The notes under the pieces were generated by a model. It saw nothing but the letters and a program-made list of their open reading frames with translations. It was not told the origin of the DNA and ran no database searches. The translations under genes and the position numbers were made by a program. Shown one piece after another: positions 8,385 through 59,087 of a stretch of 64,000 bases of DNA (positions are counted from its first letter, which is position 1; every line of letters begins with the position of its first letter). Source of the DNA: Octopus sinensis (lineage: Eukaryota); assembly GCF_006345805.1 (NCBI RefSeq), contig NC_043011.1, forward strand, positions 20,534,464 to 20,598,463. The letters are read 5' to 3'.

Positions 8385-8850
8385 AGGACGATGGTTATAG
8401 TAACGATGAGGAGGAAGACGATGACGACGATGACAACGCCGACGAAGATGACAACGATGACGATGATGACGACAGCGACAATGACGATGACAACAACGAC
8501 GACGATGATGACAACGAGGAAGACAAGGACGAGGAGGACGAGGAGGACGACGACAATGAGGACGACAACGAGAAGGGGGAGGGGCGGAGGGGCGAGGAGG
8601 AGGAGGAGGAAGAGGTGAGGAGGAGGAGGTGGTGGTGGTGGTGTGTGTGTGGTGGTGGAGGACAACGACAACAACGACGCAGAGGACGATGGGGAGGATG
8701 ACAAGGCGGATGAGAAAGACAAGGAGGACAAGGAGGTGGATGAGGACAATGATGAAGACGAGGTCGAGGATGAGGATGAGGACAAGGATGAGGATAAGGA
8801 GGACGAGGAGGAGGAGGACAAGAAGAAAGACGAGGACAAGGACAAGGAGG
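8385..8850. repeat. degenerate (GAC/GAT/GAG)n trinucleotide tract
   Basis: Direct reading. Explains the poly-D/E, poly-S and poly-T/R ORFs in the track. Confidence 0.9.
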
Positions 8851-8862
8851 ATATCATCTTAC

Positions 8863-8960
8863 CTTATTTATAGCTTGGCATAACACTTCAGTTCCTTTGT
8901 GACAATTGACCTCCAGGGAGCCAAGGAACTTCACCTGGAATTTCTTACAGCTGTCATCAT
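8863..8960 (-). CDS. MAPK8IP1: JIP1 coding exon F, PTB start (98 nt, phase 1 in, phase 0 out)
   Basis: tttacag|AT GAT ... AAT AAG|gtaaga. KFQVKFLGSLEVNCHKGTEVLCQAINK matches JIP1 [27 protein letters not shown]. Confidence 0.96.
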
Positions 8961-15695: not shown

Positions 15696-15905
15696 GGATA
15701 AGCAAACTGCATCATTTGTTAGCTGTCAGGACTGAGAGTCCTTCAAAAATCCATGCTTCCTAAATTTGTTGGTTTCTGTAACAGGTATTTTTACAGAAAC
15801 CAATAACAATTCATTTAAAACTAATTTATGTCAGGAGTAGTATTGGTGAATTTAGGAAGCATGGATTTTTGAAGGACTCTCACAACTGATGCAGGTTGCT
15901 TGTCC
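15696..15905. repeat. fold-back element with a perfect 34-bp inverted repeat
   Basis: 15733-15766 is the exact reverse complement of 15849-15882. Outer 24-bp arms carry 3 mismatches. Confidence 0.85.
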
Positions 15906-49273: not shown

Positions 49274-49772
49274 CTGCAAGTAACGATTGCTGTCCATGGT
49301 GGTGATGGCACCATTTGTATTGGCAGCAGTTGTGTTGTTGTTATAGGTGTTCTTGGTAACAGTGTTGTTTGTGAAAGTGTTGGCTGTAGTGTTAGTGGTG
49401 TTGCTTGTGCCCATTCTACTTTTTGTGTTGGTGAGTCCATTATCGTTTCCTTTATCACTATTGCTGTGCAGTTGTTTATTGATTTCATTCTTTCGAAGGA
49501 CCATTTCAGAGTCTGACGCCTTGTAAATTGGTTTGTCGTATGTCGTATTCGTTTTTGTGCTTCCGTAATTTCCGACATCTTTGCCGGTAAATTCCTCGAC
49601 ATCGGATTTCTCTTGAAATAATGGTACCACTGTTTTCTCGGTAACATCATATTTTCTTTCTTTCTCTTTGTTTTGCGTCAGAGAGTAAAATTCCAGCTCT
49701 TTTGGATTGAAGTCAAATTCTGCGTCAGTATCATCATCAGGAAAACTGTCCAGGCTAATGTCATGGGCGATT
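49274..49772 (-). CDS. MAPK8IP1: JIP1/Aplip1 coding exon A (first exon found; 499 nt, phase 2 in, phase 0 out)
   Basis: Acceptor tttccag|A ATC GCC CAT and donor TTG CAG|gtaagt. Encodes (R)IAHDISLDSFPDDD..., matching the JIP1 N-terminal RLTHDISLEEFEDED motif, followed by a T/N-rich stretch ending SNRYLQ. Confidence 0.88.
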
Positions 49773-50031
49773 CTGGAAAGGGATTTTAAAAAAAACAAAA
49801 ACAATTAATATTTTTATCATGGAATTAAGTAAATTAAAAAATCAAATAATTAAACATCCAAATTTCATTAATATAGGTGCAGGAGTGGCTGTGTGGTAAG
49901 TACCTTGCTTACCAACCACATGGTTCCGGGTTCAGTCCTATTGTGTGGCACCTTTGGCAGGTGTCTTCTACTATAGCCTCAGGCTGACCAAAGCCTTGTG
50001 AATGGATTTGGTAGACAGAAACTGAAGGAAG

Positions 50032-50068
<37 letters not shown>

Positions 50069-50086
50069 GACGTTAAACGATGATGA

Positions 50087-50133
<47 letters not shown>

Positions 50134-50316
50134 ATATACATATATATATATACATATATAATATATATATTATATATATATATATATAGATATATATATA
50201 TAATATTATATATATACATATATATATAATTGTTAAAGAGGACAACAAACTTTAAGGCAAAGCAAACATCTCAAGTCACACACATTATTATTATTATTAT
50301 TAGAAAAATATTCAAA

Positions 50317-50372
50317 GTCTTACAGCTGTTTCTGGGATATCCCAGAGTATGGGGTATTCCATCATCAGAGAC
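50317..50372 (-). ncRNA. minimal type I hammerhead ribozyme motif (Penelope-like-element type)
   Basis: Minus strand reads GUCU CUGAUGA UGGAAUACCCCA-UACUC-UGGGAUAUCCCA GAAA C-AGCU-G U A AGAC. Intact core, 4-bp stem I, 10/12-bp stem II, palindromic stem III and a GUA cleavage triplet. Activity untested. Confidence 0.72.
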
Positions 50373-51000
50373 GAATAGGGAAAATGAGAAGGCTATAGAT
50401 TAAAGAAATGACAACATAGAGGACAGGAGTAAAGGAATATGCTTCTTTTTTCTTCTCTTTCATCATCTCCTTATTTCTTAACATTTGTTGTCCTCTTTAC
50501 CAATTATATATCCGCTATATCAGACATCTGCAATGGTTCCATAACTATGCATGACTGCATTCAAATGGCTGAAGCAAGTAAAAAAATAAAAGAATAAAAT
50601 AATCTGAGATGAGTTGTTAACCTCATTACACTCTTCACAGCATTCCATGTTTAATTTTAATTAATCAATTTTAATTAATCAATTAATTAAAATTTTGAGA
50701 TTATCTCCCCTATCACTTTTATGAAAATTAGTCATTTAGAAAATGATCGGTCTCATTGGTTAAGGGTGTAATTTTAATAAATGTTTCTGAGGTTACTATG
50801 TGAAGTATGCTCGCATCAGCTTTACTATTTGGAGATATATGCCTTATCTTTAAAGATGATGCATTTTAGGGATGATGAGAAGCATAAACTAAATAATCAC
50901 CATATGCAAAACCAAAGTTCATGCCAAATGCTTTATCTTTAATATGTATGTGTGTATATACTCAGATACATTAATATATCTATCTATCTATCTATCTAAA

Positions 51001-51066
<66 letters not shown>

Positions 51067-51081
51067 AATATAAATATACTG

Positions 51082-51168
<87 letters not shown>

Positions 51169-51316
51169 CAGAAATATGTTACGAAAAGAAAATATAAAAT
51201 ACATGTGGAAATGTAAGGGTAAAATATGAAAAATCAACGAAAATGCACATGTATATATATATATATTTCAGTCAATCTAAATATGTATATATTTGTCGTT
51301 ACCTATCATAAACATA

Positions 51317-51358
<42 letters not shown>

Positions 51359-51446
51359 TACATATATATATGTACATATATATCTAATAGATATATTCCA
51401 AGTAAGTTTTATCTATCTATCTATTTAGCTAGCTAGCTAGACAGAC

Positions 51447-51567
<121 letters not shown>

Positions 51568-52567: not shown

Positions 52568-53610
52568 AATGTACATAAATACATACACATGCATACATAT
52601 ATATATACATGTGTGTGTGTGTGTGTGTGTGTGATCATCATCATTTAACGTCTGTCTACTTACCATGCTGGCATGGGTTGGACGGTTTGACAGGAGACTA
52701 CTCTAAGCTTCAGCTTCACTGTCTGTTTTGGCAATCTTTATGCCTGGATGTCCTTCCTAACACCCTAGCTGCATTCAGTGACAATTATAATTCTCCTTTT
52801 TTGGTGACACATTGCAAACTGCTGTTTATATTATTTATTTATATATATCACCGTGATCACCGTGACCGACCAGGCTATCAGATTTTGCTACACATCGCTG
52901 GTCACAATGCGTTTCGCATTGTTTTAGCCTTCAAATGACGCCACCCCGCTGGCTAAGTGAGCTGGCCAACAGAAGAAAGAGTGAGAGAAAGTTGTGGTGA
53001 AAGAGTACAGCAGTGATCGCCACCACCCCCTGCCAGAGCCTCGTGGAGCTTTAGGTGTTTTCACTCAATAAACACCCACAACACTGGTCTGGGAATCGAT
53101 ACCGCGATCCTACGACTGTGAGTCCGCAGCCCTAACCACTGGGCCATTGCGCCTCCACATTTATATATATATATACATGTGTGTGTATAGATACATAAAT
53201 ATACACACACACACTCACACAGACATAGATACATACATACATATATTCATATGTATGTACCTTTATATTATTTATATATATATCTATATACATATATTTG
53301 ATTACAGAGGATCCATAACAGATCGAAGCATACAGAAGTGAAGCACACCACAGTTATTGGCTGGCCAGAATGACGTAAATCCGATTGTTAAGTAATCCAA
53401 TATCATACCACAAATGAATCAATGATGGGAAGTTCTCTGTTGTTTGGTAGTCAACAACTCCAACAACTGGATACTTTGGGGTATATTCTACATATATTAT
53501 ATGTATTTGCATACATATGTATAGATAGATAGACAGACAAACAGATAGACAGATATATTCTGCATTAAATTAAAAAAAGGTGATCTGTGAAAATGTTGTA
53601 AATAACAATA

Positions 53611-53803
53611 ATAAGTTTGCTTATAAGCATTCACAGTATATTGGCTAATACAGAAATAATCTAATATTGAGGTATATAAGCCCTTGATAGAAAAAAATTT
53701 GTATTAGTATACGACCAATTTTTTTCCATCGTTGGCTTATATGGCCCAATACTATACTATTTTCTATAGCCAATATACAGTGAATGCGTATAAGCAAGCT
53801 TAT
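53611..53803. mobile_element. small MITE with ~37-bp imperfect TIRs
   Basis: Left ataagtttgcttataagcattcacagtatattggcta; right end reverse complement ataagcttgcttatacgcattcactgtatattggcta. Confidence 0.7.
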
Positions 53804-57935: not shown

Positions 57936-58684
57936 ATTTCTTTTGCTATCTGGAATCTACTGATCACTCACAGACACACACCAGTGTCTGGCCCACAGAT
58001 TAATTGTCTCCTTTCTCTATCGTTTTTTATTACCATTATGGCAATGGTTGCTCTAATGTTAACTCAACCCAGTCAGTCATTTTAACCCCTTCTCATCACC
58101 CATCTTGTTTCCAAACTCACAGGCCCCCACTGACCATTACATCATGTCATTTTTCTTTACAGAATATTATCCCTCTAGGTATCCTTCCCTACACATTTCT
58201 TACCTGCAATCATGTGCTCCTTTCATTACATGTAATATATGAATCACTCACAGACTCACACCGACCTCTGTCTCCTTTCCCCGGTCTTTTTTTTGCTACT
58301 ACAATGACAATAGCCTTTGCTTATCAGAGATGGCTAGTTTCTGTTAACTTCACCCAGGCATTATTACCTCATTTATTTTACCTCCTGTCATCACACATGT
58401 TGTTACCAAGCTCACAAACCCCACTACTCACTCTACCCAGTCATTTCTCCCCAGAATATTGCCCTGCAAGGATTCCTTCTCTGTACATGTCATTCCTGCA
58501 GTCATCAACTTGCAACAATTTTAATAAAACAGCTTCAATTTCACCCATCCCAGAGGGCATGAAGATCCTATGGCCACCACTCCTTACTTAAAACCTAACT
58601 AATTAAAAAGATACAAATTAAAAACAAGAAAATTGCAGCAAAGCTGTGTGATAGAGGTGTCAGATGTGGCATGCAGACCATCAT

Positions 58685-59087
58685 GTTTCTGCTGTCTCAT
58701 ATGCTGTCTCTGTTGCATTTGAAAGCTCTCTGTCTGGTAGTCGTGGTGTGTTAATTTTATACTGATTGATGGGCTCAGAAAAGAGTCTGCCAAAAGTTGA
58801 AAAAGATGAATGAACACACAATGCTCATATGCACACTGAATTCATAAAACAGAAAAGAAGAATAAAAACACAATGCGCATGTCAAAATAAAGTGGAAGAG
58901 AAGAATAAAAACACAATTTCAGTTTTATGAATTCAGTGTGCATATGAGCATTGTGTGTTCATTCATCTTTTTCAACTTTTGGCAGACTCTTTTCTGAGCC
59001 CATCAGTCAGTATAAAATTAACACACCATGACTACCAGACAGAGAGCTTTGGAATGCAACAGAGACAGCATATGAGACAGCAGAAAC
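58685..59087. repeat. long near-perfect inverted repeat (166-bp arms, 71-nt spacer)
   Basis: 58685-58850 pairs with 58922-59087, with 4 mismatches counted by hand. Confidence 0.93.

What the first reader, a model, noticed from the sequence alone, without database searches (positions are those of the whole stretch)
50317..50372. Intact hammerhead ribozyme motif in the sense strand of a JIP1 intron
The minus strand reads GUCU-CUGAUGA-[stem II, 10 of 12 pairs, UACUC loop]-GAAA-C(AGCU)G-UA-AGAC. All core nucleotides are present, stem I GUCU/AGAC pairs, the predicted cut falls after A at 50321, and stem III is the palindrome CAGCUG (seen). This is the minimal type I architecture known from Penelope-like elements, which cleave best as dimers (established). 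It sits about 550 nt upstream of the exon A acceptor, inside a perfect 16-bp inverted repeat (50234-50249 / 50484-50499). An internal palindrome UCUGGGAUAUCCCAGA could sequester the GAAA strand and act as an off conformation. Inference: conditional self-cleavage of the JIP1 pre-mRNA. A lone copy may be weakly active or a harmless TE relic.
Basis: partly seen in the sequence, partly recalled or inferred. Interest (0 to 1): 0.75.

Follow-up and report, generated by a model that had tools for sequence, protein, structure and literature searches.

The report
Lone hammerhead-like motif in octopus intron
A 56-base stretch in an intron of an octopus JIP1/2 gene does spell out a complete minimal hammerhead ribozyme, but it is a single imperfect copy inside a small inverted-repeat element, so it is more likely a transposon leftover than a switch that cuts the gene's RNA.

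Summary
The motif is there exactly as described (minus strand 50372-50317). It has all invariant core bases, helix I GUCU/AGAC, helix II with 10 of 12 pairs, the palindromic helix III ACAGCUGU, and a cut site after A50321, 549 nt upstream of a JIP1/2 exon on the same strand. A relaxed hammerhead descriptor finds it as the only hit in the window. Simulated windows give 0.005-0.018 hits, which is unusual for one window but implies hundreds of chance hits per 2.8-Gb genome.

Weak points:
- Pair 10.1-11.1 is U-A, not the conserved G-C.
- No Rfam hammerhead model scores it.
- A competing palindrome hairpin takes 67% of the predicted ensemble, against 18% for helix II.
- There is no second copy to dimerise with.
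- No Penelope reading frame lies nearby.
- The only related octopod locus I could fetch has no alignable intron.

That locus does carry a cleaner Penelope-type minimal hammerhead in the same intron, but antisense.

The motif sits in a roughly 290-bp unit bounded by a real 35-nt inverted repeat. My best reading (about 0.55) is a solitary, degenerate transposon-derived hammerhead with no host function. A chance look-alike is about 0.3, and conditional JIP1 pre-mRNA cleavage under 0.1. Copy number could not be tested.

The parts
50317..50372 (-). Minimal type I hammerhead motif: GUCU / CUGAUGA / helix II hairpin / GAAA / C-AGCU-G / UA / AGAC. Predicted cleavage is 3' of A50321.
   Evidence: Read directly. 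It is the only descriptor hit in the window. Simulated windows give 0.005-0.018 hits each. No Rfam hammerhead hit.
50309..50377 (-). Extended helix I: distal UAUUC (50377-50373) pairs with GAAUA (50313-50309), separated from GUCU/AGAC by a UUU bulge (50316-50314).
   Evidence: Both helix I segments appear in the minimum-free-energy fold.
50333..50361 (-). Helix II hairpin: 12 positions, 10 paired, two A.C mismatches (A50358.C50336 and C50354.A50340), loop UACUC. The closing pair 10.1-11.1 is U50361-A50333.
   Evidence: Helix II occupies 18% of the predicted ensemble.
50331..50346 (-). Perfect 16-nt palindrome UCUGGGAUAUCCCAGA. It forms a competing hairpin that sequesters A11.1, G12 and A13.
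   Evidence: Present in the minimum-free-energy fold. It occupies 67% of the predicted ensemble.
50322..50329 (-). Helix III: palindrome ACAGCUGU, giving 2 bp plus loop AGCU in a monomer, or 8 bp between two copies.
   Evidence: Cofolding two copies pairs these 8 nt between the molecules.
50222..50256 (.). Left arm of the 35-nt inverted repeat bounding the roughly 290-bp unit that carries the motif.
   Evidence: the repeat finder pair I20, 91% complementary, 220 nt between the arms. No comparable inverted repeats in 40 simulated windows.
50477..50511 (.). Right arm of the 35-nt inverted repeat.
   Evidence: In the RNA fold of 50222-50511 the two arms form the closing stem (z = -5.4).
50035..50230 (.). 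(TA)n microsatellite abutting the unit. It is also the tail of a tRNA-like SINE at about 49877-50033 (+).
   Evidence: The SINE family matches Octopus vulgaris copies.
49274..49772 (-). JIP1/2 exon A ('(R)IAHDISLDSFPDDD...'). Acceptor AG at 49774-49773, donor GT at 49273-49272. It starts 549 nt downstream of the predicted cut.
   Evidence: An orthologous exon is 63-64% identical in protein in another octopod. The JIP1/2 SH3 exon lies further downstream on the same strand.

Best explanation
The site is a solitary, partly degenerate copy of the minimal type I hammerhead motif that Penelope-like retroelements and their non-autonomous derivatives scatter through invertebrate genomes.

It is carried on a roughly 290-bp insertion-like unit (about 50222-50511). 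That unit is bounded by a 35-nt inverted repeat and abuts microsatellites. It lies in the intron upstream of exon A of an octopus JIP1/2 gene, on the sense strand.

It is transcribed passively as part of the pre-mRNA (inferred). On its own it is expected to cleave very poorly or not at all, for four reasons:
- Helix III has only 2 bp and needs a second copy to extend it.
- No second copy is nearby.
- The 10.1-11.1 pair is U-A.
- A palindromic hairpin competes with helix II.

The intron is removed by splicing whether or not the motif cuts, so the motif most likely has no role in JIP1 expression.

Shown: the sequence anatomy, the inverted repeat, the gene context and the fold predictions. Inferred: transposon origin, lack of activity and lack of function.
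For: 1. The motif has features my descriptor did not require but which real metazoan hammerheads show:
- a fully palindromic helix III with its loop (ACAGCUGU);
- a distal helix I segment behind a 3-nt bulge;
- a long helix II and a short 4-bp proximal helix I;
- a U directly after A9.

2. No simulated hit had a comparable helix II.

3. The motif sits inside a unit bounded by a non-random 35-nt inverted repeat, next to (TA)n. Penelope-like elements are reported to prefer microsatellite targets, (TA)n included. They carry the hammerhead near the 3' end and often have an adjacent inverted 5'-truncated copy (PMC8557442).

4. The host is an octopus: SINE ORFs are 86-90% identical to Octopus proteins, and SINE DNA is up to 92.6% identical to O. 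vulgaris loci. Octopus genomes carry Penelope-like elements, with 31 recently active families in O. vulgaris (PMC13282606).

5. A related octopod has a clean Penelope-type minimal hammerhead in the same intron (L001 8839-8878, minus strand). It reads GUCU CUGAUGA U GAAGU-UUUU-ACUUC GAAA UUAA UU AGAC, and shares the 13-nt 5' half GUCUCUGAUGAUG and an AGAC..UGAAUA 3' flank with the window motif. Together that is 2 motifs in 145 kb against 0.073 expected, and 0 of 150 simulations gave 2 or more.

6. Against host function:
- there is no partner copy;
- the competing hairpin takes 67% of the ensemble against 18% for helix II;
- single minimal hammerheads were inactive in vitro, and dimers only weakly active (PMC4209133).
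Against: - No second copy of the 290-bp unit was found in anything I could search: the window, 81 kb of other octopod DNA, a six-frame protein search, and metagenome or prokaryote DNA scans. Multi-copy status, the hallmark of a transposon, is therefore untested, because no searchable Octopus genome was on hand.
- No RT or GIY-YIG domain lies within 3.3 kb upstream on the same strand.
- The flanks of the window motif and the L001 motif are not significantly similar overall (Smith-Waterman score 13.5 against a shuffle mean of 13.8).
- G10.1-C11.1, which PMC4209133 counts among the signatures of genuine Penelope hammerheads, is absent. The 12-position helix II is also longer than the 6-8 bp described.
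- Rfam hammerhead models give no score.
- Terminal inverted repeats are more typical of MITEs, which are DNA transposons, than of retroelements.
Confidence: 0.55

Rival explanations
1. Chance look-alike. The 11 core bases and the three short helices arose by accident in AT-rich intronic DNA. They were helped by a local near-duplication of the palindrome UGGGAUAUCCCA, which automatically produces a 'helix II'. The surrounding inverted-repeat unit would be an unrelated MITE or foldback element.
For: - The relaxed descriptor gives 0.005-0.018 hits per 64-kb window. For a genome of about 2.8 Gb (19 Mb is 0.68% of it, PMC13282606) that is roughly 200-800 chance hits, so a scan of many windows will meet some.
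- The two strands of helix II are 10/12 identical direct copies of a self-complementary 12-mer, so this helix needs no selection to explain it.
- U10.1-A11.1 replaces G-C.
- No Rfam hit. No other copy. No Penelope ORF.
- About five inverted-repeat clusters occur in this window, so small inverted-repeat units are common here whether or not they carry a ribozyme.
Against: - Several traits not required by the descriptor co-occur: palindromic ACAGCUGU, the distal helix I behind a bulge, and U after A9.
- None of 800 simulated windows produced a helix II this strong.
- A second, more canonical minimal hammerhead with the same 13-nt 5' half occurs in only 81 kb of independent octopod sequence, where about 0.04 is expected.
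Confidence: 0.3
2. Functional intronic ribozyme. The motif self-cleaves the JIP1/2 pre-mRNA conditionally, with the palindrome hairpin as the off state. This would lower the output of full-length mRNA or affect splicing upstream of exon A.
For: - The motif is on the sense strand, 549 nt upstream of the exon A acceptor.
- The core is intact.
- Two mutually exclusive folds of comparable stability exist, at 18% and 67% of the ensemble.
- Intronic hammerheads are known in amniotes (PMC6765202).
Against: - No conservation could be shown. The intron does not align in the related octopod, and that species' hammerhead lies on the antisense strand of the same intron.
- No dimer partner.
- Helix III has only 2 bp, and 10.1-11.1 is U-A.
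- Single motifs of this architecture were inactive in vitro (PMC4209133).
- In Xenopus, hammerhead-bearing retrozymes are depleted from introns, which suggests such insertions are selected against rather than recruited (bioRxiv 10.64898/2026.07.22.740005).
Confidence: 0.07

Closest known systems
Minimal hammerheads of Penelope-like elements (Cervera & de la Pena 2014, PMC4209133)
   Same: Type I topology, a short helix I (4 bp proximal), a long helix II, a U right after A9, a very short palindromic helix III that can only be extended by pairing with a second copy, and a host genome rich in Penelope-like elements.
   Different: - The U after A9 is paired with an A inserted before G12, so 10.1-11.1 reads U-A instead of an unpaired base followed by G-C.
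- Helix II has 12 positions with two A.C mismatches, against 6-8 bp.
- No pLTR, tandem copy or RT/EN reading frame is nearby.
- It is a single copy in 64 kb.
Metazoan non-LTR retrozymes (PMC7229834; bioRxiv 10.64898/2026.07.22.740005)
   Same: A small (under 400 bp) non-coding unit carrying a type I hammerhead with a palindromic helix III. Dispersed single copies are described as well as tandem arrays.
   Different: There is no tandem repeat here. The unit is bounded by an inverted repeat, which is not a described retrozyme feature. Rfam Hammerhead_1, which detects canonical type I motifs, gives no hit.
Amniote intronic hammerheads HH9/HH10 (Rfam RF02275/RF02277; reviewed in PMC6765202)
   Same: A hammerhead on the sense strand of an intron of a protein-coding gene, thought to derive from retroelement-type hammerheads.
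   Different: Those are ultraconserved across species and fold as stable monomers with tertiary contacts. Here no conservation could be shown and neither Rfam model matches.
Newt satellite 2 and Schistosoma Sm-alpha hammerheads (Forster et al. 1988; Ferbeyre et al. 1998, as cited in PMC4209133)
   Same: A 2-bp helix III with a small palindromic loop, and activity that depends on double-hammerhead (dimer) formation.
   Different: Those lie in tandem or highly repeated units that supply the partner copy. This one has no partner within the window.
MITEs (miniature inverted-repeat transposable elements)
   Same: Size of about 290 bp, terminal inverted repeats of about 35 nt, AT-rich and TA-flanked ends, and a strongly hairpin-forming transcript (z = -5.4).
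   Different: Multi-copy status and target-site duplication could not be established. To my knowledge MITEs are not known to carry hammerheads.

Membership tests
Hammerhead ribozyme (any type) | Invariant core C3 U4 G5 A6 N7 G8 A9 / G12 A13 A14 / A15.1-U16.1 / H17 | tested here: met
   CUGAUGA 50368-50362, GAAA 50332-50329, U50322, A50321. Descriptor hit.
Hammerhead ribozyme (any type) | Three helices radiating from the core | tested here: met
   Helix I has 4 bp plus 5 bp behind a bulge. Helix II has 10 of 12 pairs. Helix III has 2 bp plus a 4-nt loop. However, the full hammerhead fold scores -10.7 kcal/mol against a minimum free energy of -16.5.
Hammerhead ribozyme (any type) | Quasi-invariant G10.1-C11.1 pair closing helix II | tested here: not met
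   U50361-A50333. PMC4209133 calls G10.1-C11.1 highly conserved.
Hammerhead ribozyme (any type) | Match to a curated covariance model (Rfam Hammerhead_1, _3, _II, HH9, HH10) | tested here: not met
   No hammerhead family reported at gathering score, or at E<=10 on 551 nt or 91 nt. The cleaner L001 minimal hammerhead is missed as well, so these models are insensitive to this subclass.
Hammerhead ribozyme (any type) | Site-specific self-cleavage giving 2',3'-cyclic phosphate and 5'-OH ends | not testable with these tools
   Needs an in vitro transcription and cleavage assay, or RNA end mapping.
Penelope-like-element minimal hammerhead | Short palindromic helix III / loop 3 that allows a dimeric active form | tested here: met
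   ACAGCUGU is a perfect 8-nt palindrome. It pairs between two copies in a cofold.
Penelope-like-element minimal hammerhead | Unpaired nucleotide between A9 and G10.1, followed by G10.1-C11.1 | tested here: inconclusive
   U50361 follows A9, and GG...CC follows it, but U50361 can pair with A50333, which sits between the CC and G12.
Penelope-like-element minimal hammerhead | Location in the pLTR of an element with an RT/GIY-YIG reading frame, usually in tandem or partial-tandem copies | tested here: not met
   No Pfam domain in three frames over 3.3 kb upstream on the same strand. Downstream lie a SINE and exon A. No second motif in the window.
Penelope-like-element minimal hammerhead | Member of a multi-copy genomic family with covarying helices | not testable with these tools
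   No searchable Octopus genome was available. Only 145 kb of octopod DNA could be examined, with one further motif, in L001.
Metazoan non-LTR retrozyme | Tandem repeats of a 170-400-nt unit, each with a type I hammerhead | tested here: not met
   No direct repeat of the unit.
Conserved intronic hammerhead (HH9/HH10-like) | Conservation of the motif in the orthologous intron across species | tested here: inconclusive
   The only ortholog available (L001) aligns in the exon only. Its intron carries a different hammerhead on the opposite strand.
MITE | Terminal inverted repeats | tested here: met
   35 nt, 91% complementary. Non-random.
MITE | Many dispersed copies with target-site duplications | not testable with these tools
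   No copy in the window or in L001-L004. The ends lie in TA-rich sequence, so a TA duplication cannot be judged.

The most novel reading that the evidence does not exclude
The motif could be an RNA-editing-gated intronic ribozyme. Both mismatches in helix II are A.C (A50358.C50336 and C50354.A50340), which is the context ADAR prefers (from my own knowledge). The flanking 35-bp inverted repeat would give the pre-mRNA a long duplex that might recruit ADAR in a cephalopod neuron. Modelling either A as I (treated as G) makes helix II the minimum-free-energy helix and displaces the competing palindrome hairpin. Editing could therefore switch the hammerhead from off to on and couple JIP1/2 pre-mRNA integrity to ADAR activity. 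Nothing here shows editing or cleavage, and the weak helix III and the U10.1-A11.1 pair would still limit activity.
Probability: 0.03. Interest if true: 0.85.

Novelty: new member of a known kind. Interest (0 to 1): 0.25.

Why it matters
If it is a transposon relic, it is one more of the very many minimal hammerheads that Penelope-type elements leave in invertebrate genomes. Its main value is as a caution: an 'intact' hammerhead consensus in an intron is not evidence of regulation. It would matter only if the lone copy really cleaves. It would then be the first intronic self-cleaving ribozyme tied to a neuronal scaffold gene in a cephalopod, and possibly one gated by an alternative fold or by RNA editing. 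That is cheap to test in vitro and by looking at existing octopus RNA-seq.

Tried and rejected
1. **Rfam**, at gathering and permissive thresholds, on the window, on 551 nt and on 91 nt: no hammerhead family. The clean L001 motif is also missed, so this negative result is weak.

2. **Other copies of the 290-bp unit or of the motif.**
- blastn within the window and against 81 kb of other octopod DNA.
- Mismatch-tolerant pattern searches.
- A six-frame pseudo-protein search of the 5.8-billion-protein collection.
- Exact-pattern scans of metagenome and prokaryote genome contigs with the inverted-repeat consensus and with a hammerhead-specific pattern.

All found nothing. None of these resources holds a searchable Octopus genome, so copy number stays open.

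3. **Homology between the window motif and the L001 motif beyond the core.** By eye they share GUCUCUGAUGAUG, AGAC..UGAAUA and a ..CYTTAACAA.. end before (TA)n. Local alignment of the whole units is no better than shuffled sequence, so I do not claim homology.

4. **Orthologous-intron conservation.** Only exon A and one SINE align between the window and L001. The upstream first exon was not found.

5. **A Penelope RT/EN next to the motif.** None was found.

6. **Fraction of the ensemble in the full hammerhead fold.** My first figure (1.7e-5) overstates the problem. It is dominated by the intrinsically unstable 2-bp helix III that all such minimal motifs share. The fairer comparison is helix II at 18% against the competing hairpin at 67%.

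7. **Lunse et al. 2017** (dimeric Penelope hammerheads) is not held in the library.

Full report
**What is at the coordinates**

Reading the minus strand gives this layout:
- distal helix I, 5' strand UAUUC (50377-50373)
- helix I, 5' strand GUCU (50372-50369)
- core CUGAUGA (50368-50362)
- helix II, 5' strand UGGAAUACCCCA (50361-50350)
- loop UACUC (50349-50345)
- helix II, 3' strand UGGGAUAUCCCA (50344-50333)
- GAAA (50332-50329)
- C (50328), loop AGCU (50327-50324), G (50323)
- U (50322), A (50321)
- helix I, 3' strand AGAC (50320-50317)
- bulge UUU (50316-50314)
- distal helix I, 3' strand GAAUA (50313-50309)

Every invariant hammerhead position is present. Helix I pairs GUCU with AGAC and can continue behind the UUU bulge as UAUUC/GAAUA. 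Helix II has 10 of 12 pairs, and its two mismatches are both A.C. Helix III is A-U and C-G closed by AGCU, so ACAGCUGU is a perfect palindrome. The cut would fall 3' of A50321.

The repeat finder extends that repeat to 35 nt at 91% (50222-50256 / 50477-50511). The one correction is that the pair closing helix II (10.1-11.1) is U-A, not the G-C that is nearly universal in natural hammerheads.

**Is it more than chance?**

I wrote a relaxed descriptor: helix I of at least 4 bp, CUGANGA, helix II of at least 4 bp with at most 2 mismatches, GAAA, helix III of at least 1 bp, then U followed by a non-G base.
- It finds this site and nothing else in the 64 kb.
- Windows simulated from the window's own order-1 and order-3 statistics gave 2 and 7 hits per 400 windows. 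None had a helix II this strong.
- For a single window the motif is therefore unusual, at about 0.005-0.02 expected.
- An octopus genome of about 2.8 Gb (19 Mb is 0.68% of it, PMC13282606) would still hold a few hundred chance hits, so the statistics alone do not settle it.
- Helix II is partly 'free'. Its two strands are 10/12 identical copies of a self-complementary 12-mer, so a local duplication would create the helix without selection.

No Rfam hammerhead model reports the site at gathering score, or at E<=10 on 551 nt or 91 nt. The same models also miss the clean minimal hammerhead in L001, so this negative result is weak.

**Context**

The window is octopus DNA.
- It is 36% GC and full of microsatellites and tRNA-like SINEs.
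- The SINE ORFs are 86-90% identical to Octopus bimaculoides and O. vulgaris proteins.
- The SINE DNA is up to 92.6% identical to O. vulgaris loci.

The gene is a JIP1/2 orthologue on the minus strand.
- An exon near 26.4 kb matches the JIP2 and JIP1 SH3 domains (E = 4e-11 and 3e-10).
- Exon A (49772-49274) encodes the N-terminal '(R)IAHDISLDSFPDDD' segment.
- Exon A has a polypyrimidine tract and acceptor AG at 49774-49773, a donor GT at 49273-49272, and no start codon of its own.

The motif is therefore intronic, on the sense strand, 549 nt upstream of the exon. I could not find the upstream exon by homology. Between the motif and the exon lie a (TA)n tract (50035-50230) and a SINE (about 49877-50033).

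**The unit that carries the motif**

The 35-nt inverted repeat is not a chance feature. Forty simulated windows gave no comparable inverted repeat, while the real window has about five clusters. As RNA, 50222-50511 folds with the arms as a closing stem (z = -5.4). The motif thus lies in a roughly 290-bp insertion-like unit flanked by TA-rich sequence.

Two readings fit.
- **A MITE-like DNA element.**
- **The arrangement described for Penelope-like elements.** That arrangement has the hammerhead near the 3' end, frequent 5' truncation, an adjacent inverted truncated copy, and a preference for microsatellite targets including (TA)n (PMC8557442).

No RT or endonuclease domain lies within 3.3 kb upstream on the same strand. 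No second copy of the unit or of the motif exists in the window.

**Related sequence**

The exon A protein found one homologue (P0001, 64% identity) on a 225-kb ENA contig, fetched as L001. Only the exon and one SINE align between L001 and the window, so the introns have turned over.

L001 does carry a textbook Penelope-type minimal hammerhead 1.15 kb upstream of the same exon, but on the antisense strand (8839-8878). It reads GUCU CUGAUGA U GAAGU-UUUU-ACUUC GAAA UUAA UU AGAC. It has the unpaired U, G10.1-C11.1 and the palindromic AUUAAU, and it is flanked on both sides by (TA)n.

It shares the 13-nt 5' half and an AGAC..UGAAUA flank with the window motif. Overall, though, the two units are no more similar than shuffled sequence, so I do not claim homology.

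With a unified descriptor there are 2 motifs in 145 kb of octopod DNA against 0.073 expected, and 0 of 150 simulations gave 2 or more. Discounting the window, which was chosen for its motif, that leaves 1 motif in 81 kb against about 0.04 expected. This suggests octopod genomes are enriched in genuine minimal hammerheads. The literature agrees: Penelope-like elements are abundant in coleoids (PMC13282606, PMC8967140), and 235 Rfam Hammerhead_1 hits were reported in the giant squid (PMC6962438). Two O. vulgaris loci and one Argonauta locus (61 kb) held no motif and no copy of the unit.

**Would it work?**

- **No partner copy.** Helix III has 2 bp. Motifs of this kind are described as active only when two copies pair through the palindrome. 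Even then Penelope minimal hammerheads cleaved poorly in vitro, and single motifs did not cleave at all (PMC4209133; PMC6765202). Two copies of the window motif can pair through ACAGCUGU in a cofold, but the locus supplies only one copy.
- **Competing fold.** In the predicted ensemble helix II forms in 18% of structures and the competing palindrome hairpin in 67%. That hairpin sequesters A11.1, G12 and A13. The minimum-free-energy folds of the 81-nt and 290-nt contexts both contain the competitor. In the L001 motif helix II forms in 85%.
- **Closing pair.** The U10.1-A11.1 pair removes the guanine that forms part of the A9/G10.1 metal site (established knowledge of the hammerhead).

Together these points predict little or no monomer activity.

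**Speculative aside**

Both helix II mismatches are A.C. Modelling either A as inosine (treated as G) makes helix II the minimum-free-energy helix. In a heavily editing cephalopod, with a 35-bp duplex next door, an editing-gated ribozyme cannot be excluded. There is no evidence for it, and I give it about 3%.

**Verdict**

The mechanistic inference is not supported.
- **Solitary, degenerate, transposon-derived minimal hammerhead with no host role:** about 0.55.
- **Chance look-alike inside an unrelated inverted-repeat element:** about 0.3.
- **Functional conditional cleavage of the JIP1/2 pre-mRNA:** under 0.1.

The decisive missing piece is copy number and orthologous-intron presence in Octopus genomes. 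No available tool could search these. After that comes a simple cleavage assay of monomer, dimer and core-mutant constructs.

Noticed in passing
L001:8839-8878 (minus strand; ENA ERZ21867824 ctg119204l): A clean Penelope-type minimal hammerhead, with an unpaired U after A9, G10.1-C11.1, a 5-bp helix II and the palindromic AUUAAU. It lies 1.15 kb upstream of the orthologous JIP1/2 exon but antisense to the gene, and is flanked on both sides by (TA)n. It is a curious coincidence that both species have a hammerhead in the same intron.
   Followed up: partly
window:50222-50256 and 50477-50511: In the pre-mRNA the 35-nt inverted repeat would form a roughly 35-bp duplex enclosing 220 nt. That is a plausible ADAR substrate in a cephalopod neuronal gene. 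Both helix II mismatches of the motif (A50358, A50340) are A.C.
   Followed up: partly
window:5773-6117 (+): An ORF that looks by eye like the N-terminal HTH region of a mariner-type transposase ('...CRRWFAKFRSGEFSLEDR...'). L001 16736-17221 has a weak HTH_48 hit.
   Followed up: no
window:47663-47848 (+): A short ORF ('RIPWTVRLTNGEVLKQ...KRRLAYFGHIMWRE') that resembles by eye the C-terminal end of an RTE/CR1-type LINE reverse-transcriptase ORF.
   Followed up: no
window: about 15720-15880, 50960-51540, 53600-53800, 58660-59080: Further inverted-repeat clusters (at least 30 nt, at least 90% complementary, spacer up to 400 nt) that simulated sequence never produced. Some may be tetranucleotide-repeat artefacts, such as the (TCTA/TAGA)n region at 51.0-51.5 kb.
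   Followed up: no
window:49877-50033 (+) plus the tail at 50035-50230, and many other sites (e.g. 22.4, 43.2, 44.9, 48.7, 52.2, 60.4 kb): Copies of a tRNA-like SINE with microsatellite tails. Their spurious ORFs ('[14 protein letters not shown]...', '[28 protein letters not shown]...') are annotated as hypothetical proteins in Octopus vulgaris, O. bimaculoides and Argonauta hians.
   Followed up: partly
L002:18201-18328 (minus strand; Octopus vulgaris OX597836.1): A full-length U4 spliceosomal snRNA gene (69.8 bits).
   Followed up: no
window:52004-52068 (-): A second CUGAUGA...GAAAC...UA string without supporting helices. The descriptor rejects it, which shows how easily the bare core strings recur.
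   Followed up: yes
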